Shown here piece after piece: positions 1 through 21,664 of a stretch of 64,000 nucleotides of DNA; position 1 is the first letter of the stretch; each line of letters begins with the position of its first letter. Both the position numbers and the translations under genes were made by a program. Source of the DNA: Magallana gigas (lineage: Eukaryota); the NCBI RefSeq assembly GCF_963853765.1, contig NC_088859.1, positions 38,688,001 to 38,752,000 of the forward strand. Direction: 5' to 3'. A model generated the notes under the pieces. That model did not search any database and had not been told where the DNA came from. It saw nothing but the letters and a program-made list of their open reading frames with translations.

Positions 1-640
1 ATTTCAAGAACTTGGCATAAAAGGCAAGAAAACTTCATTTAATTACCCGACCAAGGTCGTTTTATCAAGGTCAATGTCAACTGACAATATTTGACTCACC
101 CATAATCTTTGGTCTCCCAATAGCAAAGAACGTGTCCAAGAATATTTCAGCGGTAGAATTTTGATTCAAAACTTGTGTATGCAAATTTGTGTCGTGAATG
201 AACAAAGATGGTGTCATCTTACACAAAACCTGACTTTACTTATCTTTACTTTAATGTGACCCTTTTGTATAAGGATAATATAATTACATTATCTGATATA
301 TTTTATATACAAAAATATATATAAAATATATATAAACAAAACACAACAACAACAACAAACACAGAAGATAACACGCTCTATACAAAGATTTATTTACGTT
401 TGTATAAATATTTAATGCGTTGAGGCTTGTGAACATCTGAAAACGGAGTTGATCGAACTGCTGATGAATTAAAAACAGCAAACATTTATATCGTTTGTTG
501 CCATGATGTCCTTCAAATGTAGAAAGACAGATTTTTTTTCTACAAAATGCCTCACACTTATTTAAAGAGTCAAACATTAAATTAGAGCGATTGGATATCA
601 AGTTGAAAGACAGCAGGGATGTCTTTTTCAATGATTGGAT

Positions 641-1101
641 CTAATCAACACCAAGGTTGACGTATTTTTCAAGCCTCTCCATTTCTTTGTGGGCTTTTTC
701 AATCTGTTTCTGAATGCGGGCCTCCTCTCTCTTTTGTTGTGCCAGCATCTGTTTCCTTGCCAAAATCTTTCCTTGATTTTCTGTGAAAAATATGTACATA
801 AAAAACGATAAAGAACAATAACTACGTTTCAATTATGGTATTATCAACATTTGATTTTTATGGTCTTTTCCAATTTACCTCTCCATTTCTCGGGATCCTC
901 TTTTTTGAGTTCCATCAGTCTGCGAGGCGGCATCTTTGGGGCTTCCTCCGACACGAAGGTCAGACCGAATGCTACCCCTCCTTTCTTTTCCGTCACCCCC
1001 TCTGTTACCATCGTACGACGTACCTTATCGTACACTTCTTTCTCCTCTTTCATGACACCGACTTTGTTATTTCTAGCCAAACAACTCTGAAACAACCCCA
1101 T
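641..1101 (-). CDS. Stathmin-like (STMND1-like) small coiled-coil protein, copy 1, 120 aa, 2 exons
   Basis: Exons 1101-879 and 780-641 (GT-AG, phase 1, 98-nt intron) give [120 protein letters not shown]. The GGVAF-x-L-x-F motif, Pro-rich linker and charged helix resemble the stathmin-like domain. Gene model is strong; family call is moderate. Confidence 0.7.
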
Positions 1102-1304
1102 GTTGATTTCTTTGATTTACAGAATGCGTGTTACTACACAATATCAATGATAATGTATAACATTGTGATGTCACAGTATCATGACGTATAGTATGTATGC
1201 AAAGTAAATCTCAACGTCATAATGACTGGCAATTTATGACGTAATCACAGTTGATCAATATAATGTTGTTTGATCATTTTCCGTATAATTATAATTTTAT
1301 TTAA

Positions 1305-5743: not shown

Positions 5744-6062
5744 GGTTGTATGAAATACCTCCATTATGTGACGTGCATCCTATTGAAACAATAAAATCAG
5801 AAGAATAATTTTATTGTTCTCTCCTGGAAATGTAACTCAACAACCAAGTACAATGGGGTAGAGCGTTAACTATGAATCTTTTAGTCATGATTTCGGATCC
5901 TGCTGGGGTTTTTATACCTTTTCAAAGGTTTTTACCATGCCAAAACTGTATTAAGTACATTTATTTGGTCAAATTTTGTAAAAATTTAAAAATTCAAAAC
6001 GGTGAAAGTATTTTAAATGTAATGTACTACATTCTCATTAAGGTTCAGATTTCGATACCACC
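5744..6062 (+). mobile_element. Degenerate ~320-bp TTAA-type MITE with an internal tRNA-like segment
   Basis: TTAA|GGTTGTATGAAATACCT ... AGATTTCGATACCACC termini; colinear with the element starting at 21665. Confidence 0.6.
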
Positions 6063-7491
6063 AAAACGTTAGGCAATAAATTTTTTTCTTTGTGTTTATT
6101 AATATATTCTAACCTCCTATACTAATAGTAAAAAAATTGTTCTTTTGCAAAATTGTATCATATTGTTAAAAAGGATATTTAAAAGAAAAAATAAAAAAAA
6201 TTGAAAATTGTATTTTACATGTACAATTAAACGAAACCAACGGGTTTGATATTCTTCTTTAATACACAAATATTCCATAGCTAATGTTGGCTATATTGGC
6301 TAAGTGATTAGACACCAGTTTCGGTTTGAGTGATATAAAAAGCGGATATCATTTACCTTTTCTGTCAGAGGTTTCATAGAATATTCCTCCTGTCTGACGT
6401 TTGACTAAAAGTTAACAGGTCGTGGGTTCTATCCCCAGTCCAACTATTAATTTTCGTTTAATTATAATTACTAATTCCAACCTTCATACTACGACAGAAC
6501 TGACAGTTAATGAGCGTCCAAGAAACATTAATGGCATACTAATATAATATGCTAATATGTTAGTATAGGCGTCTTATTTTACGTGTGAGCACGTTTGTCA
6601 CGAATGTACAAAGCCTAGATCGACCTTGCAGTACCATTGTACCCAGTTTGTTGACCTATGTCCGCTGTACAAAAAAATGGGAGAAAACATGCAACTGTGA
6701 ACAGATATTAACTGTTTAGTCTATAATTTATCCATACTGAGAACTGTCCTTTGCAAAACAATATAGAACTGGATTTTGTCTGAGTTTCTGGAGATCGTTT
6801 AAAATTGTATGAAATACATGTACATGTATATATTACCATAAGCCGGACGGTAATATTCAACCGTTTCATCACACAATGCTTTTATATGGTGTCAAGTGCC
6901 ACGATGTTTCTTTTAAAAAATCATAAGATTAATCTCTTTCTAGTTGTTGGGTGTAAAGTTAGATAATTAAGTTTGAAATCTCTTTTAATAGTACTGAGTG
7001 GTAAATCTCTTTATGGGTAAATCTAGGATGATGGCGATGTCCCCAAAACCTTATTGCACGTGGCAATGTAAATGTACTAATACTTGTATTCTGCTTTGCA
7101 TTTTTGCTGAACCAAGCTACTTCTAAATCGAGTACATTACCATTTACCCTACATGATCTCAAAAAGAATTTCTCACTCTCCCAAAACTAAGCGAGCGTGA
7201 TTTCAGATTGATGAAAACGCTTTTACCAATTACTAACAATGAACATACACTAAATATACACGTCTTTTTCTGCAATTAAAAACAAAGTATTTATAAAATA
7301 AGAAACAAATTCATCCAATTTTAAATTTATTAGTTATTTCTTCGTCACATTGATTAAAAATTTCATGACGACAAAGAAAGTGTAAATTTAACGGTCTTCG
7401 ATAAACGTTTTATGTCCCACGCACGTAAAGTTCAATCATTATCCTTAAACTCCACAGCTTTGGACAATTTCAGACAGTGTTAGAGTGGCAT

Positions 7492-7946
7492 CTAATCAGC
7501 ACCAAGGTTGACGTATTTTTCGAGCCTTTCCATTTCTTTGTGGGCTTTTTCAATCTGTTTCTGAATGCGGGCCTCGTCTCTCTTTTGTTGTGCCAGCATC
7601 TGTTTCCTTGCCAAAGTCTTTCCTTGATTTTCTGTGGAAAAAATACCAGTTTATCAACAATCACGTTTTGATTAAATGTTATCAAAAATTTGGTTACGAT
7701 AATAGTTGTCTGCTCCAGCTTACCTCTCCATTTCTCAGGATCCTCTTTTTTGAGTTCCATCAGTCTGCGAGGCGGCATCTTTGGGGCTTCCTCCGACACA
7801 AAGGTCAGACCGAATGCTACCCCTCCTTTCTTTTCAGTGACCCCCTCTGTTACCATTGTACGACATACCTTATCGTATACTTCTCTCTCTTCCTTCATGA
7901 CACCGACTTTGTTATTTCTAGCCAGACAACTCTGAAACAATCCCAT
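7492..7946 (-). CDS. Stathmin-like protein, copy 2, 120 aa, 2 exons
   Basis: Exons 7946-7724 and 7631-7492 (92-nt GT-AG intron). Same exon sizes (223+140) as copy 1; ends KYVNLGAD*. Confidence 0.7.
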
Positions 7947-7980
7947 GTTGATCAATAACCTGTTTCTAAGAACGAATGGC

Positions 7981-8040
7981 ATTGTGACGTCACAATCTAA
8001 TTGACGAAACATTCCTTCTACATCAAGACGACGTCATAAC
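7981..8040. promoter_or_regulatory. CRE-like (TGACGTCA) cluster upstream of stathmin-like copy 2
   Basis: Perfect 16-bp palindrome ATTGTGACGTCACAAT (7981-7996) plus TTGACG and ACGTCA half-sites; conserved upstream of copy 3. Confidence 0.55.
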
Positions 8041-10608
8041 GTAATCAAAATCAAGTAGAAACTTCAACATCGACGTAAACACAAAATTACACAGGTACCT
8101 TTCACAAACTTACTCATAGTAAGAACAATTTTAGATAATATGTTTTACGGTGTGACCGTTAGGGCGAGCGCAGAAGGAACCACACATCTGTCATCATTGT
8201 TAAATGCAACCCGTTGACTTGCCCTAACAAAAAAACTTGGGCTTTGCATAATGTTTGAAAACTTTACCGCCGCAAGGAACCCAAAGTTTTTAAACTTTTA
8301 TTCCAATGGTCCCTTCCTTAAGGCTTATACACTTAAACAAACTACCATGCACTGAGCATTAATAAAATGTTAAACAGACTTATTAAAATATTTAGATAAA
8401 CACAAAGCCGTTTGGTTTTTTTATGTAAATACAATTAAGTTTTTACCATTCCTTTACCTTTTTAATAATGATCATTAAAATCAGTAAACATTAAAGTGTG
8501 TGTCTGTGTTATTTCTCATTTTGTACCTTTTTGAAATCTGTGTTTTTGTTTTTAATCTTTTTAATTTTTGTACGCTATATAAGCGTTGTAGACATGTGCC
8601 CTCACCCTTTTTTAGTGTGTGTTATCCAATTTTATTTAAAGGTTTGACCACATATGCAACTATAACGAATACATGTAGATATTTTAACAGTTTAATTTTT
8701 TTCTTTTATTTATTCATTACAAAATGACATGGCTGCACGTAGATCTAATAATGATTGGACTTTTCTTTTTTTTTTCTTTTTTAATAATATTTTTTTCACC
8801 TACCTAACGTATGCATATATGTTTGGATCAATATGACAGTAAATTTAGCATGGAACTTGCATGTGTATTTACTGACCAAAAAAAATCATCAAAACTAATC
8901 AGCCAAAGAGTCACCGTTAACACTGATATTGAGTACTTTCTATACGTTACATCCAGTACAGATGCTTGATTTACCTCTAAATTTATTGCTGGAAATTATA
9001 TAGCCCGAGATCATTGTTATGTCATACTTAACTTTTGCGCTCGACAGTTTTCGTAAATTGTCGGGCAAATTCGGGGAAGGAAATGACGTCATATGTCAGC
9101 AAAAGTTCAGATAGGTACAGTTTTTTTACGTAAGCATATGTGTTTTTAAAAGGATTTTTTAATTGTTAAATGAAAATGATGTATGCGATTTACAGGTAAG
9201 AATTTTCCGTAGAAACGCTTCCTGTTCCACCATGTTGCTATGCACCGCAAAGGATTATTGGGATATGTAGAACTTTTTCACGTGGCCTCATAAAAATTTC
9301 TTTGAACAATGTGCAGATTTCAACTCGAATTTTCTCCGTTCGTACACGTTGTCTATGGAGCTCGCTTCGCGAGCGCTGCGCTCGCTATAAAATAGTAAAA
9401 CATGTATTGCTATGCAAACAATATTAATACCGATGTATGATATCTTTAATTTCAAATTATGAGAAAAAAATCGCCTTGTAAAACTGCCGTGTAAATTACC
9501 GTGGGTTTCAGGATAGTAGTGGGCAGTGTTTTCTAATTATATCCACTGCAGTCCAATATGACGTTTTCATTAAAAAAAAGTATAAATTACGTGTGCATGT
9601 TGTGGTTTTTTTTTTATGTTTTAAACTGTTGATATGGTTTATAAAATTCACTGCTTTTGCTTACTGGCCGTGGACCAACTTGCTGATATTTCCGTTCTTG
9701 TTAATAATTTATTTCATGTCCAACTTTTTTCCTTCGCACTTTTGTGAGTGAATTATCTCCGATCGCGTTTTTTAAAATGCTTAAGCATACATCCATAAAC
9801 ATATCGATGCATTGTTTTAACGCCAGAATAAAGTCGTAATTTTTTTTCAATATTACAAATATCAATGATAAGAACGCTTCAGTTAGTTGCCAGTAAGCTT
9901 ATATTTGCGAGACCTCGCACCAGGATTCGATATAATTTCAAAAGATGTAAAATGAATTAATGCAATTTTGATGTCTCTGTTAATACTTAGTGTCATCAGA
10001 GATGGTTTCTTTGTACACACATATATCTTCATATAATAAAGCACCATCTTCACATGAAATAACCACAGCATAATATAATAAAGCACCATCTACATATAAA
10101 ATAGCCACATAAGGCAGCTATGGCGTTCCATACACATAACTTTAAAAAAAACATGTGGTACATGTTTCGGATTTTTTGTTCGTTTTTTTAAAATGTAAGA
10201 TGTAAGAAAAAAAGTTTTGTTTTTGTTTTTTGTTTTTTGACCTTTTTATTGGTGTACATGCATTAATATTTTAGAAACAAAAACAAAACAAAAACTTGTT
10301 GTTCAAGATAAAATCTTTATTTTAATTTTTTGACATTCAGTTGCCATTGATTGATCTTTACGACAAAAAGTAGGCTTAAACAAAATAAAAATACACACTG
10401 CTGATTCAAGATTAACAGAACAAAATTCGTTGTTTTTTAATGTCTTTTATATTTATCAATTCGTTGACTTTAACAATAACTTCATTAAATCGTTGAATCT
10501 GTTTTTATGAGACACTAAATATAATTATGAAATTATCAAATAGATTCCAAATGCGTAACTTTCAATATAAGGTACAAATAGTAGAGGAGAATGTTTCAAA
10601 ATATATTC

Positions 10609-13628: not shown

Positions 13629-14883
13629 TTTTCTCCGTAAGTTGACTCCGTGAGACTTGGATTCTGATTTGAAGTAGAGTAAGGACCTGCTGAGGGGTTT
13701 TATATCGCCAGTCGAAAAAGCAGGTGCGCGCCGAAAATGAATTTAGCCGCACCGTGCAGCATATGTGTGGTCAATATAAATTGTATGTGCAACTGAAATG
13801 ACAGTTATAATTATAATACCGTCATTTAATATCAAATTTACTTGATCGACGGTTAAGTAATTTGAACAAATGAAACAGATGTGTCAAATTGGCCTTACTT
13901 CTGTAATGACTTGCCCGAGGGCTCTGTTTGGGGTCAATTTTACTTGATGTGACGTCATTGTATACGAACGAAAAAAAATATCACCCACTTTCATAACGGC
14001 TCTTTTTTATCAATTACTTACTGATGCTCAGTCCTCCAAATGTTCTTATTATTTCCAAATCTTGATAGAATCTTTTTTCTCAGGTTCAGATTTTCAAAAA
14101 CCACACAAGTATAGAATTACATTTAAAAAGAAGATGGAGAAATAAGATGGTACAAATGCCCATTGGTTCAATTGTAAAATATAATTTCAATTTTGTTATT
14201 TTTCAATCAAAATCTATATGATAATAATTTGATACTATTTTGCATTAGAAGAATTTCTAACTATAGACAGATTGAATATTCTAACGAACATGAATAAAAC
14301 AAGATATCTTGATAAGGTGCACTATAGTTAAAATGTTCTTCACCATTTGTTCTCATTTTACAATTTCATCAGACTATCACGGAGTAAAAAATTCAATGAC
14401 CTATTATTGAAAACATTTTGTATGAATTTTTAAATTAACATTCCTTTATTTGTTATAATTTTTTCTCCATGCTTTATTTCTATTATTACAAATACAATAG
14501 TTATATTTTTAAAGACAAACCCACCAAAAAGACAGAACACAAACTGTCACTCTTTCACTCATTATCAAATTGTTATATCTATAACACATTCTATCTTTAA
14601 TAACATAAATTCAAAAACATTTGTTTACGTAAGGCGTAATAGCCCTTATTTGTCCAGAAACCAATGGCAGTTAAACGCTTTATGTTTTTAAAAAAAATCA
14701 TATTAGCCGACGATGAATAGGGTCATACTTTCATTAATTTATTGAAAATTATTATAATAACACCACAAATTTTGATATAACGTTATGACGTCGTCTTGAT
14801 GTAGAAGGATTGTTTCGTCATTAGATTGTGACGTCATAGTGTATTGATACTAGTTCTACATAGAAACATTCGAAGAAATCAAC

Positions 14884-15351
14884 ATGGGGTTGTTTCAGAG
14901 TTGTTTGGCTAGAAATAACAAAGTCGGTGTCATGAAAGAGGAGAAAGAGGTGTACGATAAGGTACGTCGTACAATGGTAACAGAGGGGGTGACGGAAAAG
15001 AAAGGAGGGGTAGCATTCGGTCTGACCTTCGTGTCAGAGGAAGCCCCAAAGATGCCGCCTCGCAGACTGATGGAACTCAAAAAAGAGGATCCTGAGAAAT
15101 GGAGAGGTGAGCTGGAGCAGACAACTATTATCGTAATCAAATGTTTGATAATATCGCAATTGAGCCGCGAATTGATATTCTAGTTTCTTTTTATATCTTT
15201 TTTTGGTACAGAAAATCAAGGAAAGACTTTGGCAAGGAAACAGATGCTGGCACAACAAAAGAGAGATGAGGCCCGCATTCAGAAACAGATTGAAAAAGCC
15301 CACAAAGAAATGGAGAGGCTCGAAAAATACGTCAACCTTGGTGCTGAATAA
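14884..15351 (+). CDS. Stathmin-like protein, copy 3 (inverted), 120 aa, 2 exons
   Basis: Exons 14884-15106 and 15212-15351 (GTGAGC...TACAG, 105-nt intron); ends [19 protein letters not shown] at 14829-14836 upstream. Confidence 0.7.
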
Positions 15352-16051: not shown

Positions 16052-16299
16052 GTCGTCCATCCGAATTTTTCAGACCGGGAGCTGCAGCTAGCGTGTCATA
16101 TTGATATGAATATGATATTTACATAAAGAGAAAAGACAAGTACATTTGCACTGGCTTTAACCAATCATACAAAAAATAATTCTACTGTGCACAACGACTA
16201 TCTAAGTCGAACCAAATTCAAATTATCAGTATTTTATTCCCCCTTCCTCTTTAAAAACAGTCTGCAGCTCCCGGTCTGTAAAAAAAACGGATGGACGAC
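16052..16299. mobile_element. ~250-bp MITE with ~38-bp TIRs
   Basis: GTCGTCCATCCGAATTTTTCAGACCGGGAGCTGCAG at the left end and CTGCAGCTCCCGGTCTGTAAAAAAAACGGATGGACGAC at the right end. Confidence 0.7.
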
Positions 16300-16565
16300 C
16301 TAGATCGTTAAAAAAAAAATCAAACCGGGAGCTACAGACCTGCAGCTAAGATTTAAAGCGCGTTATCAACACAAAATCTGTAAAAATAAAATTCGTACTT
16401 TGTCAAACACTAAAATATGAGTAACTTTTCCTCTTTAGTTCCCGACCAACACACAAAATAATGATACAAAAGATGTATTTCTAAAGAATATATCATTTAA
16501 TGCAACAAAATGTGTAAAACAAACAAATAAAACAGGTGGGAAATGAGGTAAAGTGATGGAGTTGT

Positions 16566-19500
16566 TTAGTGGATCAGCATGAGGGCGATGACCGTGAGTT
16601 TGTCCACTGACTGGATGTTGTCCTTGCCCAGCAGAAGGCGGGTCCCGGCCCCCAGGGCGTCCTGTCGACTAAAGGCGCTGTGGAGGTCCGCCACGGGGGC
16701 TGCTCCAACCACCCTACAACCACAGGAAATAATTAATCCATGTAGATAAAAGGGAAAGAATACGTCAATATATTTTAAAATCTGAGAAACAGACACAATG
16801 GAAGAGTTGCAATCACTGACATCAATTTTTTTCAAGCAAATTGCATTGGATTTGTAACCCATTAACTAGTTAGAACTATGTACAGAGATATACCGTCGGA
16901 TTAGTTCACATCCTGCAAATCCAGCCATTTCTGACAGCAGGTTGTCTTGATACTGTTGTAGTGTCCCTACACTGCTCGTCATTTCCTTCAGGTAACTACT
17001 CACTGTAACAGTGAAGATTGTAGTCATCAGACGGCAATGAGGATTAAAACGAAGATGAACACAAACCAACGGCCATTATTGCATACGCTTACTGACACTG
17101 CCGTGGGTTTCCGGAGATGACACAAAACTAATTGTGATGTGATATGATGTTTTGATTGTAATGTGATACAATGAAATGGTTGTGATGTGATAGGCTGTCA
17201 GGATTGTGATGTGATACATTGGTTTGCTTGTGATGTGATGCCATGATATGGTTGTGATGTAATACATCGATATCATTTTGATGTGGTACGATGTTATTAT
17301 TGTGATTTGATAGGATAATTTTATTGTGATGTTATAACTTTGATTTGATACGATGACATGATTGTGATGTAATAAGATGTTATAATTTTGATGATATACG
17401 ATGTAATAATTGTGATATGATACAATGATATGGTTGTGATTTTATATGATGAAATGGTTGTGATTTGATACGATTACATTATTGATACATGCTATGACGC
17501 ACCTGTTAATTTACATGCTTCTATCATCTTCTGCGCAAACTTCCGGTGTCTGTCGTTGTCCTCTGGTATAGACATGTGTCCGTAGTAAGAGAAAATATAA
17601 TTGGCCAGGAGAACCCCGATATCAAACGCTGGGGGTCCCATGTAGGCAAATTCCAAATCAATCATCTGGATGTATAACATAACAAATATCAAAACGACGG
17701 TGTTAAGCCGTTTTGTTTTTTCTTCATTAGGCGTCCTTTTCTTACATTGTTAATGATGTGGTAATAGTTGTCACAATTTACGTCCATAATTACTTTCCAT
17801 ACATTTTGTGCTACGTTTATAATGTTACTTATTTATTGTTAGAGTTGCTTTCCATAGTTTAAAGCTCACTCAGCCGGTTTTACTAGGCGGGTTCTAAGCC
17901 CGTGCATTTAAGAATTCACTCTGGGCGTAGCAATTGGAGAGAGCGGACGTTTTCTACCAGCTCCCTCATTTCATCCTACATGTAATGTATAAGTATTTCT
18001 GACCAGAGTCCAACTATTCTGGGTAAGTTTGTTTTTATTTTAATGAAACGGATTTAATGCCGTATTTATTCCTAAAATGGCCAGATAATCTTGTTTTATA
18101 TTTTCCGTGAGTAATTTGGAAGTATTTCGAAGTAATGTGTGATAATGAGTATTTGCTCATACGGAAACTATTAAGTAAAAGTATGTGTATTGTTGTGATG
18201 TAAACATATGTTGTATGTATTTCAGAGTAAGGCGCGTAGTAGTTGCCGTAAAATAAATGTATTTATGTAGTACACAAGTATATGAAAGTGAAGTACGTGT
18301 ACGAGTCTAGTGATTGAGTAAAGTAAAGTATATGTAGTGAAGTAGTAAAGTTATGTACAGCAAAATGTGCAAATGTAAGTGTAAATACAGGAAAATGTAT
18401 TTAGTAGAGTAATGCGCAGTAAAATGCAACTATGAGTAAAATAATGTTATCTGTGTATTTATCATTTCATTTATATTTCAGATCCCTTTTTGTACCTTAA
18501 TCTCAAGTCTGTTGAAGAATTGGAAATTTATCTGTAAATTATCACCTGAATAAAAGCTACGTAAACCTATTGAACGTTATTATTTTGGAGCCGCAACGCC
18601 ACCCGGCGACAATAGTATACAATAAAAAAAAATGTCCACAGTTTTTTGGGGGTTATATCACTTACTTTTGAATTCCCGCCGTCAACCATCACAGAACCTG
18701 TATGTAGGTCGCCGTGCAGAAGACACTCTTTCTTTGTCAGGAAGATGTTCTTCATAACATCAGCTGCCTCCAAAACTCGGGGATTATCGTAGAGCTGAGG
18801 GAGACTAGAGCTGATGTCTTCCGAGAGTCTGTTGGTGCTGTCAGACTTGTCGAAAGGTTTCGTGAAAATATACTGCTCCGTTAAGGAAACCAGTTCAGTA
18901 TCTCTGTCGTCATAATATAAAAAAGAGCATCGATCAATCAATTACAATTTTTACTAAATTCTTGAAAAAGGACTGGTGTCATCAGTGAATTTTCATAATA
19001 ATCCAATTCAATTGTTTTATGAACACAAATAATGTACGAAAATTTAGTATAAATACATTATCAGATTATCAGCAGAGCAGGTGCCCACGAGCACTTGCAA
19101 ATACGTACCGTATATCCAGTAATTTTACTCGATTATTTAATATTCGCTTGTTTCGCGATGACTTTTAAATCGCAAAATATTAAAACGCAAAAATTGTATC
19201 CTGCAAAATTTTCTATAAGAAACTTTACGGTAAATTACAGGAATAAGGAATTCTGTCAAACGCCAGCGAGCTCCAGCCCTCAAGCATAGATAATGACATA
19301 CTCACGGGAATTTCTGTTTGAGTTGGGAAAAGCTTTGCTCGCCAACTTTGGCGAGATGTGATTGATTGTGAACTTTGCCTATCCCTCTGGCTAATTTCTT
19401 AACCGCCTCCAAACTACAAACGCCATCTATGAGCTGCTTACGGAAATCCGTATATGTGGTTAAGTCTTCCATACACACTGTAAGAAATTCAAAATTGATT

Positions 19501-21100
19501 TTAAACAATTAAATCAAAATTACACACTAGCATAATATACTGCATCATAATTTTACAGCAGGCTTAAAGGGGCATGGTCACGATTTTGGTCAATTTCTAT
19601 TTTTCTGTTTTTTTTATTTACAATGCATTTCTAATAAACAAATGAAATTTGAGAGTCATTCGTAAAGTTATATGCAAGATACAGGGCTCACAATTCTTCC
19701 TCATGTAAACAAGGCTCGTGCCTTGTTTTTGTTTATATAGGTTCAATGTACCATTAAAAAATCTTTTGCAAGATAATTTGTCTATCTTTTTATTCATTTT
19801 AAGCATAAATAAACAGTTCCAAACCTTTAACACGTTCATTTTAGGTCCAAAACTTAAATTTTTTACTTTAACATTCAAAATATAAACAAACTTTGTGCAC
19901 AGATCACACAATTTCAAGCTCTGTAACTCCCTTATAACTCAACGAATGAAACTCAAATTATGGTTGCCTATTAAAAATGCCTAACTAAAGCATTGTAAAC
20001 ATTAAAATCGAAAAAAATATTTTTTGACCAAAATCGTGACCATGTCGTAAAGAGTTAAGTGAATTTACATGAGCACTTGTGCGTTATTTTTCTCGTTTTT
20101 CTCAACACAATTACTTGTTTTACAAGTATCATAAAATATGTAAATACTGACGCTTATCTCAAGAGACAGGTTTGTTCCATTTTGTGAAAGAAATTCTTTT
20201 AAAATGAATGATTGGTGCATTAATTACTAGTTTTTGATTCTTTGTCATAGAAATAGGGCTGGGGTACACATCCAGGCGCCAAATCTGAGAAAATACGGAG
20301 AGCTTCATATTCAGTCTGACCTCGACATGGATCCAGGGGATACTCGGGACCCAGACACTACAATATAAAAGAGTTCATTACTGACATCAAAAGTTATTCG
20401 CTAATTCTTAGTTTGATCTAAATTCCATTCGGCACTTGTTTCAACGAATAAAGCGCTAGAGCTAGTACTTTGTGTGTAACAATGCAAATACATGTGTCTA
20501 CCTTGATATATGGAGGTGCACTTTTAAGAATGACGCTTTTAGACGCGTTTTTAACCCTTATCACATCGTTCAAATTTCCATCTCCAACTGATGCCAATTC
20601 TATTTCCTCTGTACGAACAGTGAAATGCTGTAAAAGAAAAATATGGAACAATATCTCGATCTTCAGAACATCTCCTTTCAACGATAAATCAATAAACCAG
20701 TCCTTATGGCTGTGTGGAAAGCTTTCAGTGCAATGAGAAAAATTTCCGATAGGCCCAGCGATTCTAATTGCGGAGGGGGGGGGGTGCTTTTACAATTGTA
20801 ATATATTTGACCAAAGGCTAACCGATTCGCCCCATATATATTATTAATTATTGATTAGGATACCCATTTTTCGGGTCTGTTCAAGAAGCAGTTTTAAATA
20901 AACAATAAAATTAACAAAGTACTTAGTAATTCATTAATTAAATAAACAAAGTACTTAGCAATATACTGTTACATACTAGTCCGCCGTACATACATTGTAG
21001 TACAACACTGACCTACCTTGATCTGGTCAAGCCGTGAGTATTTGTTTAGTAGGTCGATGAACGTCGTCCGATTGTTTATATCCTCACTTTCAGCGGTCAT
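16566..21100 (-). CDS. mtnK: 5-methylthioribose kinase (MtnK family, choline/aminoglycoside kinase fold), 389 aa, 8 exons
   Basis: Exons 21100-21017, 20627-20502, 20357-20228, 19477-19306, 18903-18666, 17665-17503, 17002-16894, 16713-16566 (1170 nt, all GT-AG, phases consistent). Motifs VGDGNLN (glycine loop), VILKSAPPYIK, MEDL, LLHGDLHTGS, IDLEFAYMGPPAFDIG, GFAGCELIRRVVGAAPVADL. Confidence 0.9.
17130..17490. repeat. Degenerate TGTGAT-based minisatellite (~23-25-bp unit) in MTR kinase intron 6
   Basis: Repeated GGTTGTGATGTGATACAATGA-like units. Confidence 0.8.
19568..20045. mobile_element. ~480-bp TTAA-type MITE (AGGGGCATGGTCACGATTTTGGTC family), right end degenerate
   Basis: TTAA|AGGGGCATGGTCACGATTTTGGTCAA ... 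TTGACCAAAATCGTGACCATG; colinear with 33967-34454. Confidence 0.8.
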
Positions 21101-21664
21101 CGTAACCCAAGTGTTGTGATCAACAACTTTACAAAGATTTTACAAAAAGATCATACTCGGAGGAAGTTTTTGCGGATAAGGTGACTTGTCTTAATCTGTA
21201 AAATTGCGGTACCACATGATTGACCTATTTAGATCATAGGGGTCGAGCCTGATAAAGATCTGTGGAAGGACGAACATTCGAGTCAAAAGTAGATATTTTT
21301 TGTATAGAAAAATTCCATACTCTGGGATGATTGGTCAGTGGATGTATTAGCAAACAATTAGAGATACCATTTAGTTTGCTTTGAATTTATGGGGATAATT
21401 TTTGTCAATTTTGCTCAAACGTCTTCAAGGTGTTATGGGCGGTTAAACAAACAAGTCCTTATTATTTATAAGCAGTTTGACATACTTTCTTTAACCCCGT
21501 CGCCTACATTTTAACTGAATTTTTCCATTTTTCAACTTGTTCTCTACAAAGATCATAATCAAACATAAAGCGATTTCAACTTTATTCAAATGGTAAGTAA
21601 TAGACTTCATTTCCAAAGGGAAGATAATAAAAAAAAAAAAAAAGGAATCATTATAGTGTTTTAA

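What the first reader, a model, noticed from the sequence alone, without database searches (positions are those of the whole stretch)
16566..21100. Intact, intron-containing methylthioribose kinase in an animal genome
Seen in sequence: an 8-exon, 389-aa ORF with all MtnK motifs (GDGNLN, HGDLHTGS, DLEFAxxGPxxFDIG). Established: MTR kinase belongs to the nucleosidase/kinase branch of methionine salvage used by many bacteria and plants, whereas model animals use MTA phosphorylase in one step. Seven spliceosomal introns and oyster-type transposons inside the introns exclude bacterial contamination. Inference: either an ancient horizontal acquisition or a patchily retained ancestral gene. It could let a filter feeder salvage free methylthioribose from algae or bacteria, or indicate a second salvage route.
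Basis: partly seen in the sequence, partly recalled or inferred. Interest (0 to 1): 0.7.

Follow-up and report, generated by a model that had tools for sequence, protein, structure and literature searches.

The report
Oyster methylthioribose kinase gene, ancestral not transferred
The oyster window holds a real, expressed, eight-exon gene for a methylthioribose-kinase-family enzyme, but the same gene is already annotated in many marine invertebrates, and it looks inherited from early animals, not recently taken from bacteria.

Summary
A minus-strand gene (21100..16566) has 8 exons, 7 GT-AG introns and a 389-aa product. All seven junctions appear in RNA contigs, and a transcript-derived protein (P0170) is 98.5% identical over its full length.

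The protein belongs to the MtnK family. It matches TIGR01767 at 259.9 bits, just under the 275 cut-off, while orthologues in three other phyla pass. The AF2 model (pLDDT 93.7) hits only solved MTR kinases at the top (TM 0.78-0.89). The G-loop, HGD, IDxEF and RR motifs are intact.

It is not special to oysters. Named homologues exist in many molluscs, a brachiopod, annelids, echinoderms, amphioxus and a sponge, and an unnamed one in an ichthyosporean. The gene tree mirrors the species tree. Six of the seven intron positions and phases match exactly between oyster, Lingula and amphioxus; the first falls within two alignment columns. This supports a patchily retained ancestral gene and argues against recent transfer.

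Two points are new. Animal, algal and Poribacteria-like members form a subfamily whose 5-substituent pocket (Tyr/Tyr/Ala) differs from the characterised enzymes (Trp/Leu/Leu). The substrate (MTR versus 5-deoxyribose) and the source of free MTR are untested.

The biology is interesting but largely already annotated. Interest is moderate to low. The scan had not noted this before on other DNA.

The parts
21017..21100 (-). Exon 1 (84 nt, Met1-Lys28), start codon at 21100-21098
   Evidence: Junction 20627/21017 seen in RNA contigs of X3, X14 and X1 and in one raw read of X21. In-frame TAA upstream at 21142-21140.
20502..20627 (-). Exon 2 (126 nt), holds the G-loop GDGNLN and the ATP-binding Lys63
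   Evidence: Matches TIGR01767 positions 26-66. Junction 20357/20502 seen in RNA. G45, N46, N48 and K63 are invariant in the 48-sequence alignment.
20228..20357 (-). Exon 3 (130 nt), W-loop region, here CLGPEYPL with Tyr in place of Trp
   Evidence: Matches TIGR01767 positions 67-107. Junction 19477/20228 seen in contigs and in 3 raw reads. Pocket table.
19306..19477 (-). Exon 4 (172 nt), linker (MEDL) and first C-lobe helices
   Evidence: Junction 18903/19306 seen in X14 and X1 contigs. Exon size is identical in Lingula, sea urchin and C. virginica.
18666..18903 (-). Exon 5 (238 nt), holds the HGDLHTGS catalytic loop (Asp236)
   Evidence: Matches TIGR01767 positions 169-241 at 65.9 bits and PDB 2olc at 5e-11. 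Junction 17665/18666 seen in RNA.
17503..17665 (-). Exon 6 (163 nt), Mg-binding IDLEF motif followed by GPPAFDIG
   Evidence: Matches TIGR01767 positions 247-294. Junction 17002/17503 seen in RNA.
16894..17002 (-). Exon 7 (109 nt), ends inside the GFAGCELIRR twin-arginine substrate-binding motif
   Evidence: Matches TIGR01767 positions 323-349. Junction 16713/16894 seen in RNA (reported as 16712/16893 with 'cut +1').
16566..16713 (-). Exon 8 (148 nt including the TAA stop at 16568-16566)
   Evidence: Covered by RNA contigs of X1, X14 and X3.
21101..21232 (-). 5' untranslated region (minimum extent)
   Evidence: RNA contigs reach 21232 (X14) and 21218 (X3). The true start was not mapped.
16391..16565 (-). 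3' untranslated region (minimum extent)
   Evidence: An X3 contig runs on to 16391, while the X14 and X1 contigs end at 16552-16556. The poly-A site was not mapped.
19573..20044 (.). MITE-like multi-copy element inside intron 3
   Evidence: 41-nt inverted terminal repeats, 80% complementary. Depth in the thousands and many loose ends at 19563/19564 and 20044 in all four runs.
17131..17474 (.). 24-bp satellite array inside intron 6
   Evidence: Tandem Repeats Finder: period 24, about 8.6 plus 6 copies, 72-73% matches.

Best explanation
This is a single-copy, expressed oyster nuclear gene for a kinase of the 5-methylthioribose kinase (MtnK, EC 2.7.1.100) family, under purifying selection. Descent: it was inherited vertically from at least the last common ancestor of animals, and probably from an earlier holozoan. 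It was kept in many marine invertebrate phyla, and it was not seen in the vertebrate, arthropod or nematode models. Mechanism, inferred from conserved residues and the solved homologues: the Gly-rich GDGNLN loop and Lys63 hold ATP. Asp253 and Glu255 of IDLEF bind Mg. Asp236 of HGD polarises O1 of the alpha-ribofuranose. Arg340 of the RR motif grips O2/O3. The product would be a 5-substituted ribose 1-phosphate. The most likely substrate is free 5-methylthioribose. The resulting MTR-1-P would enter the universal lower methionine-salvage pathway at the same point as the MTAP product. The enzyme would therefore be a second entry route, for MTR that comes from a nucleosidase or from food and microbes. 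Shown here: gene structure, expression, family membership, fold, motif conservation, phylogeny and intron conservation. Inferred: substrate, pathway role and source of MTR.
For: All 7 junctions are seen in RNA contigs and raw poly-A reads, with first mates on the + strand, as expected for a minus-strand RNA in the usual stranded library. P0170 is 98.5% identical over the full length. The TIGR01767 MTRK hit is 259.9 bits at 4e-77 over residues 13-381, against 35 bits for the next family; orthologues in sea urchin (281.8), Lingula (294.4) and Owenia (297) exceed the 275-bit equivalog cut-off. PDB hits are 2olc at 9.6e-45 and 2pyw at 4.3e-39. The AF2 model has pLDDT 93.7 and pTM 0.93. Its 15 best Foldseek PDB hits are all MTR kinases (TMq 0.78-0.89), followed by a drop to PsiK at 0.64. 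The motifs that PMC2194712 gives as defining MTR kinases (G-loop GXGNXN, HGD, IDXEF, RR with Glu three residues upstream) are all present, and their core residues are invariant or nearly invariant in 48 sequences. dN/dS against the C. virginica orthologue is about 0.11, and 8 of 11 exonic polymorphisms are synonymous. Microsynteny with C. virginica is kept on both sides: neutral ceramidase upstream and an array of a small gene downstream. For vertical descent, the careful ML tree gives Bilateria 99/92, Metazoa with sponges 94/92, and Metazoa plus an ichthyosporean and a protist 94/87. Inside Bilateria it recovers amphioxus, echinoderms (98/89) and lophotrochozoans (98/94). Introns 2-7 sit at identical alignment columns and phases in oyster, Lingula and amphioxus. 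Sea urchin lacks only intron 6. Intron 1 falls within two columns in all four.
Against: The oyster protein falls 15 bits short of the NCBIfam equivalog cut-off. The three residues that cap the 5-methylthio group in the solved enzymes (Trp74, Leu180, Leu345 in B. subtilis, per PMC2194712) are Tyr76, Tyr182 and Ala345 here. They are Tyr/Phe, Tyr/Phe and a small residue (Ala, Thr or Val) in almost all animal, algal and Poribacteria-like members. To my knowledge no member of this subfamily has been assayed. A close MtnK paralogue (DrdK) uses 5-deoxyribose as well as MTR (PMC6079011), and NCBI names one brittle-star paralogue '5-deoxyribose kinase-like'. No MTA nucleosidase was found or could be searched for in this genome. 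MTAP protein is present in the mussel genus Mytilus, so the endogenous route may not need this enzyme. The nearest bacterial relatives sit next to asd and dnaJ, not next to mtnA, so gene context does not confirm a methionine-salvage role for the subfamily.
Confidence: 0.68

Rival explanations
1. The enzyme's main substrate is not MTR. It would be 5-deoxyribose, the by-product of radical-SAM enzymes, or another 5-substituted ribose. The gene would then serve detoxification or carbon salvage, not methionine salvage, or it would do both promiscuously.
For: B. thuringiensis DrdK is 59% similar to B. subtilis MtnK and uses 5-deoxyribose and MTR with equal kcat/Km (PMC6079011). The pocket residues that cap the 5-substituent differ from all characterised MTR kinases (Tyr/Tyr/Ala against Trp/Leu/Leu or Trp/Val/Val). 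NCBI labels an Amphiura paralogue '5-deoxyribose kinase-like'. MTAP already covers MTA in bivalves.
Against: The best and only strong family match is the MTR kinase equivalog model, and orthologues pass its cut-off. The ribose-binding residues Asp236, Arg340 and Phe256 are the same as in MTR kinases. The pocket stays hydrophobic or aromatic, which fits a methylthio group. Animals have no known drdA-type partner linked to this gene.
Confidence: 0.2
2. The gene entered the animal or holozoan lineage by one ancient horizontal transfer from bacteria, for example relatives of the Poribacteria-like group. It then acquired introns and was inherited vertically.
For: The closest bacterial sequences (36-38% identity) share the Tyr/Tyr/Ala pocket and the IK(C/I)LGP W-loop with animals. 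At the base of the tree, the holozoan clade, the Poribacteria-like clade and the Bacillus/Mesorhizobium clade form an unresolved fork. The sponge gene has no introns.
Against: A second group with the same pocket includes a pelagophyte alga and many metatranscriptome-like sequences, and an ichthyosporean and another protist sit beside animals. The subfamily is therefore widespread in eukaryotes, which fits old eukaryotic ancestry just as well. The tree is unrooted, so direction cannot be read.
Confidence: 0.3
3. Recent horizontal transfer from bacteria into oysters or bivalves, or bacterial contamination of the assembly.
For: MtnK is best known from bacteria and plants. Model animals use MTAP.
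Against: There are seven spliceosomal introns, all confirmed in RNA. Six of the intron positions (introns 2-7) are shared exactly with brachiopod and amphioxus genes and five with the sea-urchin gene; the first lies within two alignment columns in all. The tree is congruent with the species tree. Synteny with C. virginica is conserved, with animal genes on both sides. A multi-copy host repeat lies in intron 3.
Confidence: 0.01
4. The gene is a decaying relic or a non-functional pseudokinase.
For: It scores slightly below the equivalog cut-off. One RNA contig retains intron 4.
Against: The reading frame is open. All catalytic and Mg/ATP/substrate-binding residues are intact. dN/dS is about 0.11 against C. 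virginica. Spliced transcripts are present in several independent studies. The fold prediction is confident.
Confidence: 0.02

Closest known systems
Bacillus subtilis MtnK (5-methylthioribose kinase; PDB 2olc, 2pu8-2pup)
   Same: Same protein-kinase-like fold (TMq about 0.8). Sequence E-value 9.6e-45. Same G-loop GDGNLN, HGDLHTGS, IDxEF and GFAGCELIRR motifs, with Glu three residues before RR.
   Different: About 27-30% identity. The three residues that cap the methylthio group are Tyr/Tyr/Ala here and Trp74/Leu180/Leu345 there. The oyster gene is a nuclear gene with 7 introns and is not in an mtnK-mtnA operon.
Arabidopsis thaliana MTK (PDB 2pyw), the only eukaryotic MTR kinase with a structure
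   Same: Best structural match by TM-score (TMq 0.89, rmsd 2.6). Same catalytic motifs. Also a eukaryotic nuclear gene.
   Different: The plant enzyme has the Trp-type W-loop and Lys, not Glu, before the RR motif (PMC2194712). No plant-type sequence was among the 150 best representatives of the exon-5 search, so the oyster enzyme belongs to a different subfamily.
'Methylthioribose kinase-like' proteins annotated in other invertebrates (C. virginica, Saccostrea, scallops, Mytilus, Haliotis, Patella, Lingula, Owenia, Capitella, sea urchins, sea cucumbers, Branchiostoma, Sycon)
   Same: They are orthologues, 77-79% identical within oysters and 40-53% across phyla. C. virginica and Lingula have the same 8-exon structure. 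They share the same pocket residues.
   Different: None of substance. Patella (two tandem copies) and Sycon have intronless genes. Haliotis and Amphiura have extra paralogues. I found no paper that assays any of them.
DrdK, 5-deoxyribose kinase of Bacillus thuringiensis (PMC6079011)
   Same: It is an MtnK paralogue that phosphorylates both 5-deoxyribose and MTR. This shows that family membership does not fix the 5-substituent.
   Different: DrdK is defined by its drdK-drdI-drdA gene cluster, which has no counterpart at this locus. No DrdK sequence was available here for direct comparison.

Membership tests
MtnK / 5-methylthioribose kinase (TIGR01767, EC 2.7.1.100) | Protein-kinase-like (APH/choline-kinase) bilobal fold closest to solved MTR kinases | tested here: met
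   AF2 model with pLDDT 93.7. The 15 best PDB matches are all MTR kinases, TMq 0.78-0.89, and the next family scores 0.64.
MtnK / 5-methylthioribose kinase (TIGR01767, EC 2.7.1.100) | G-loop GXGNXN | tested here: met
   GDGNLN at residues 43-48. G45, N46 and N48 are invariant in 48 sequences. The motif is defined in PMC2194712.
MtnK / 5-methylthioribose kinase (TIGR01767, EC 2.7.1.100) | HGD catalytic loop | tested here: met
   HGDLHTGS at residues 234-241. H234, G235, D236, H238 and G240 are invariant.
MtnK / 5-methylthioribose kinase (TIGR01767, EC 2.7.1.100) | Mg-binding DXE motif, extended to IDXEF | tested here: met
   IDLEF at residues 252-256. D253, E255 and F256 are nearly invariant.
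MtnK / 5-methylthioribose kinase (TIGR01767, EC 2.7.1.100) | Twin-arginine RR motif with Glu or Lys three residues upstream | tested here: met
   E337-L-I-R340-R341. R341 is invariant and R340 nearly invariant.
MtnK / 5-methylthioribose kinase (TIGR01767, EC 2.7.1.100) | Semi-conserved Trp at the tip of the W-loop, capping the 5-methylthio group | tested here: not met
   Tyr76 replaces Trp, and the two partner residues are Tyr182 and Ala345 in place of Leu/Leu. The source paper calls this residue semi-conserved, so this marks a subfamily and does not exclude membership.
MtnK / 5-methylthioribose kinase (TIGR01767, EC 2.7.1.100) | Score at or above the curated equivalog cut-off (275 bits) | tested here: not met
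   P0170 (98.5% identical to the window protein) scores 259.9 bits and C. virginica 249.2. Orthologues in S. purpuratus (281.8), Lingula (294.4) and Owenia (297) pass. The model is built for bacterial and archaeal annotation.
MtnK / 5-methylthioribose kinase (TIGR01767, EC 2.7.1.100) | Catalysis: MTR + ATP gives MTR-1-phosphate + ADP | not testable with these tools
   Needs an enzyme assay. No assay of any animal member was found in the paper library.
MtnK / 5-methylthioribose kinase (TIGR01767, EC 2.7.1.100) | Pathway partners in the same organism: an MTA nucleosidase upstream and MTR-1-P isomerase downstream | not tested
   Only this 64-kb window of the genome can be read, and no partner gene lies in it. 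An earlier scan note reports a PNP-type nucleosidase domain in an NLR-like gene elsewhere in this genome, which I did not check.
Horizontally acquired bacterial gene in an animal | Recipient sequences nested inside a donor clade, a distribution restricted to one recipient lineage, and no ancient shared introns | tested here: not met
   The animal sequences form one clade that mirrors the species tree. They occur in at least six animal phyla. Six intron positions are shared by protostomes and deuterostomes.
DrdK (5-deoxyribose kinase) | Clustering with drdI isomerase and drdA aldolase, and activity on 5-deoxyribose | not testable with these tools
   Operon context does not apply to an animal gene. 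Activity needs an assay.

The most novel reading that the evidence does not exclude
Many marine invertebrate phyla, and perhaps the first animals, keep a functional 'Tyr-type' MTR kinase alongside MTAP. It would let them capture free methylthioribose (or 5-deoxyribose) released by bacteria and algae in food, gut or seawater. This would be a diet- or microbiome-fed entry into methionine and sulfur salvage that was lost in vertebrates and the ecdysozoan models. The subfamily's altered pocket would reflect a substrate range different from the textbook enzyme.
Probability: 0.3. Interest if true: 0.55.

Novelty: new member of a known kind. Interest (0 to 1): 0.35.

Why it matters
Textbook accounts, and the structural papers on this enzyme, treat MTR kinase as absent from animals and hence as an antibiotic or herbicide target (PMC2194712 cites the lack of a mammalian homologue). 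This locus and its orthologues show that the statement holds for mammals but not for animals as a whole. A well-conserved, expressed MtnK-family gene runs through sponges, lophotrochozoans, echinoderms and amphioxus.

Three consequences follow:
- It affects the reconstruction of methionine and sulfur metabolism in commercially and ecologically important invertebrates.
- It affects the off-target risk of MTR-kinase inhibitors in aquatic settings.
- It affects how gene loss shaped vertebrate and ecdysozoan metabolism.

It is a tidy case of ancestral retention that could be mistaken for horizontal transfer. The practical novelty is limited, because genome annotation pipelines already name these genes.

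Tried and rejected
- **Family scans on single exons.** The hits were collinear with TIGR01767 but each was weak. This was resolved by using the full-length transcript-derived protein P0170.
- **Exhaustive search with exon 5.** The oyster's own cluster representative was only a fragment. Full-length relatives were reached through the scallop protein.
- **Word-index search with the sponge protein.** This returned mostly Mesorhizobium sequences and no cnidarian, ctenophore or placozoan names. It says little about absence.
- **Plant-type sequences for the tree.** None lay among the fetched proteins, so plants are missing from the phylogeny.
- **Gene context of the nearest bacterial relatives.** The arrangement asd, mtnK-like, dnaJ is conserved, with no mtnA nearby. 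It is uninformative about substrate.
- **Ten literature searches.** No paper discusses an animal MTR kinase. Several broad OR-type queries returned irrelevant lists. No paper on free MTR in seawater was retrieved.
- **Earlier scan notes.** Nothing on this gene, on MTAP or on methionine salvage in this genome.
- **Recent HGT, contamination and pseudogene readings.** All rejected, as set out under the rival explanations.


Full report
**1. The observation**

The gene lies on the minus strand. Reading the reverse complement of 16400-21300 and assembling candidate exons in a script gives eight exons: 21100-21017, 20627-20502, 20357-20228, 19477-19306, 18903-18666, 17665-17503, 17002-16894 and 16713-16566. 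They sum to 1170 nt and encode 389 residues plus TAA. Every intron begins GT and ends AG. Intron lengths are 389, 144, 750, 402, 1000, 500 and 180 nt. An in-frame TAA at 21142-21140 precedes the start codon with no other ATG between them (read). CDS G+C is 47%, against 34% for the window.

**2. Expression and splicing**

Twenty public runs from eight studies hold the stretch or a part of it. RNA-library runs hold about 0.31-0.37 of its sampled words, which is roughly the exonic share of the 4.5-kb stretch. Laying four runs on 16100-21500 shows all seven junctions as CT..AC skips on the + strand, at exactly the predicted coordinates, in assembled RNA contigs of three runs.

- One 1316-nt contig (X14) spans 21232 to 16552. 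Its listed pieces cover exons 1 and 5-8, and that run's joint table shows all seven junctions at the contig's depth.
- Raw poly-A reads of a fourth run show three of the junctions. Their first mates lie on the + strand, as expected for a minus-strand RNA in the usual stranded protocol.
- One contig retains intron 4.

A 389-aa protein assembled independently from public runs (P0170, 97 member sequences) is 98.5% identical to my model over all 389 residues. Of 11 exonic polymorphisms seen in the RNA contigs, 8 are synonymous.

**3. Host context**

Intron 3 contains a 472-bp element with 41-nt inverted termini. Its depth in RNA contigs is in the thousands, with many loose ends at its borders, so it is a multi-copy MITE-like repeat. 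Intron 6 holds a 24-bp satellite.

The C. virginica orthologue (P0176, 79% identical) has the same eight-exon structure: 81, 126, 130, 172, 238, 163, 109 and 145 nt. It has the same neighbours. A neutral ceramidase gene lies upstream (window about 28.6-31.3 kb, minus strand). A tandem array of a small gene lies downstream (window 623-1104, 7491-7947 and 14883-15351). dN/dS between the two oysters is about 0.11, although dS is near saturation at 1.3. Only one MtnK copy lies in the window. Contamination, recent insertion and pseudogene readings are therefore excluded.

**4. What the protein is**

- **Exon scans.** Exon pieces hit NCBIfam TIGR01767 (S-methyl-5-thioribose kinase) collinearly at model positions 26-66, 67-107, 169-241, 247-294 and 323-349. 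Pfam gives only weak APH hits on the pieces.
- **Full-length score.** P0170 scores 259.9 bits (4e-77) over residues 13-381. The next family scores 35 bits. The curated equivalog cut-off is 275 bits, so the oyster protein misses it by 15 bits. C. virginica (249), scallop (273) and amphioxus (261) also miss it. Sea urchin (281.8), Lingula (294.4) and Owenia (297) pass.
- **Solved structures by sequence.** Only two distinct PDB sequences match, both MTR kinases: B. subtilis 2olc (9.6e-45) and A. thaliana 2pyw (4.3e-39).
- **Predicted fold.** An AlphaFold2 model built on a 48-sequence alignment has mean pLDDT 93.7 and pTM 0.93. Its 15 best Foldseek matches in the PDB are all MTR kinase chains (TMq 0.78-0.89). 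The score then drops to PsiK at 0.64, then LxmK, then the ethanolamine, choline and aminoglycoside kinases.

**5. Active site**

PMC2194712 lists the conserved elements of MTR kinases:
- the G-loop GXGNXN;
- the HGD catalytic loop, whose Asp polarises O1 of MTR;
- the Mg-binding DXE motif, usually IDXEF, whose Phe stacks on MTR;
- the strictly conserved RR motif, whose first Arg binds O2/O3, with Glu or Lys three residues upstream;
- a semi-conserved Trp on the W-loop which, with Leu180 and Leu345 (B. subtilis numbering), caps the 5-methylthio group.

The oyster protein has GDGNLN, HGDLHTGS, IDLEF and E337-x-x-R340-R341. The core residues of these motifs are invariant or nearly invariant in the 48-sequence alignment.

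The cap differs. It is Tyr76, Tyr182 and Ala345. Tabulating these three columns splits the family cleanly:
- Almost all the animals, the sponge sequences, the protist, the pelagophyte alga and its unnamed neighbours, and the Poribacteria-like bacteria carry Tyr/Phe, Tyr/Phe and a small residue (Ala, Thr or Val), with a W-loop reading IK(C/I)LGPxYPL. Capitella (His/Ile/Val) is the main exception.
- The Bacillus-like and Mesorhizobium sequences carry Trp, Leu and Leu with (V/A)GESWPL. Most of their unnamed neighbours also have Trp but vary at the other two positions.

The oyster enzyme therefore belongs to a distinct, apparently uncharacterised 'Tyr-type' subfamily. The ribose- and ATP-binding machinery is intact, but the size and shape of the 5-substituent pocket are not those of any assayed enzyme.

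**6. Distribution and descent**

An exhaustive phmmer search with exon 5 against 1.84 billion representatives found 311 proteins at E of 0.001 or better. Look-ups and a word-index search with the scallop protein named the following:
- **Molluscs (many):** Ylistrum, Pecten, Mizuhopecten, Saccostrea, C. virginica, Mytilus, Mya, Dreissena, Mercenaria, Sinanodonta, Solemya, Tegillarca, Haliotis, Patella, Gigantopelta, Pomacea and the chiton Liolophura.
- **Brachiopod:** Lingula.
- **Annelids:** Owenia and Capitella.
- **Echinoderms:** Strongylocentrotus, Lytechinus, Diadema, Holothuria, Apostichopus and Amphiura.
- **Cephalochordates:** two Branchiostoma species.
- **Calcareous sponge:** Sycon.
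- **Ichthyosporean:** Chromosphaera.
- **Alga:** a pelagophyte.

Most RefSeq entries are already named 'methylthioribose kinase(-like)'. In the scallop-query list every named animal hit ranked above every named bacterial one, and no vertebrate, arthropod, nematode or cnidarian appeared. This is suggestive but is not proof of absence.

A careful ML tree of 67 sequences (LG+C20+F+G4 PMSF, with a quick version on 95 rows) gives:
- Bilateria 99/92 (ultrafast bootstrap / SH-aLRT);
- Metazoa including three sponge sequences 94/92;
- that clade plus Chromosphaera and a EukProt protist 94/87;
- inside Bilateria, amphioxus, echinoderms (98/89) and lophotrochozoans (98/94).

The gene tree therefore repeats the species tree. 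The deeper fork between this clade, the Poribacteria-like bacteria and the Bacillus/Mesorhizobium clade is unresolved, and the tree is unrooted.

**7. Introns**

I mapped exact exon chains for the sea-urchin, amphioxus and Lingula genes on their fetched loci. I then projected the intron positions on a protein alignment.
- Introns 2-7 fall at the same alignment columns (76, 119, 177, 259, 314, 363) and the same phases (0, 1, 2, 0, 1, 2) in oyster, Lingula and amphioxus.
- Sea urchin lacks only intron 6.
- Intron 1 is phase 0 and falls within two columns in all four.
- Exon lengths 130, 172, 238, 163 and 109 are identical in oyster and Lingula.

This intron set therefore predates the protostome-deuterostome split. 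The Sycon gene and both tandem Patella genes are intronless, although they sit among intron-bearing animal genes on chromosome-scale records. This is either intron loss by retroposition or, for the sponge, introns gained later on the bilaterian stem.

**8. How it most likely works, and what is not known**

By homology, the enzyme transfers the gamma-phosphate of ATP to O1 of an alpha-ribofuranose with a small hydrophobic 5-substituent. MTR is the best guess for that substrate. MTR-1-P would then join the universal lower methionine-salvage pathway at the same point as the MTAP product.

MTAP protein has been detected in the mussel Mytilus californianus (PMC13535095), and Mytilus edulis has an MtnK homologue. 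The two routes probably coexist in bivalves. The kinase needs free MTR, either from a nucleosidase that I could not look for or from outside. Bacteria that lack MtnK, such as E. coli, excrete MTR (PMC6302742), so uptake from food or microbiota is plausible for a filter feeder. That remains inference.

The main functional rival is 5-deoxyribose. The paralogue DrdK handles both sugars equally well (PMC6079011), and the oyster pocket is not the canonical one. Gene context of the closest bacterial relatives (asd, mtnK-like, dnaJ, and an aminotransferase a few genes on) does not settle the matter.

**9. Novelty and verdict**

I found no paper in the searchable library that discusses an MTR kinase in animals. 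PMC2194712 stresses the absence of a mammalian homologue. However, public annotation already names these genes in dozens of invertebrate genomes, including two other oyster genera, so the bare finding is not new.

- RNA proof of the gene model.
- Recognition of a Tyr-type subfamily whose substrate pocket differs from every characterised MTR kinase.

Interest is moderate to low at 0.35.

Noticed in passing
window 17729-18633 (inside intron 5): This stretch is covered by RNA contigs and raw reads at higher depth than the MtnK exons. One contig shows a GT..AG skip on the + strand (18021 to 18481). It may be a repeat family or an independent or antisense transcript nested in the intron.
   Followed up: no
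window 623-1104, 7491-7947 and 14883-15351: Three copies of a small gene lie downstream of MtnK; one of them is the ORF at 7470-8012 (minus strand, 180 aa). Two homologous 120-aa genes sit in the same position in C. virginica (L009 15902-16366 and 20514-20976). Pfam gives only a sub-threshold DUF4727 hit.
   Followed up: partly
window about 28660-31290, minus strand: Exons of a neutral/alkaline ceramidase gene lie upstream of MtnK, syntenic with C. virginica (tblastx up to 98% identity).
   Followed up: partly
L005 8001-9167 and 11894-13060 (Patella vulgata); L001 6001-7143 (Sycon ciliatum): The MtnK homologues of the limpet (two tandem copies) and of the calcareous sponge are intronless, unlike the 7-8-exon genes of oyster, Lingula, sea urchin and amphioxus. 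This suggests retrogene replacement or late intron gain.
   Followed up: partly
L006, L007, L008, L010 (Poribacteria-like bacterial loci), around 5900-9100: The bacterial Tyr-type MtnK homologues always sit between aspartate-semialdehyde dehydrogenase and a DnaJ-like gene. In three of the four loci (L006-L008) an aminotransferase and a sulfatase lie a few genes downstream. There is no mtnA nearby. A PDB entry (9a5i) models B. subtilis MtnK bound to homoserine dehydrogenase, another aspartate-pathway enzyme.
   Followed up: no
window 16060-16340: A short element with inverted ends (cagaccgggagctgcagct ... gcagctcccggtctg) lies just beyond the 3' UTR. RNA contig depth is about 290 in run X3, so it is probably another MITE.
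   Followed up: no
proteins P0052, P0098 and P0125 (Amphiura filiformis); P0195 and P0199 versus P0171 and P0179 (Haliotis): There are lineage-specific duplications of the animal MtnK gene. The brittle star has at least three paralogues, one of which NCBI names '5-deoxyribose kinase-like'. Abalones have two divergent paralogues.
   Followed up: no
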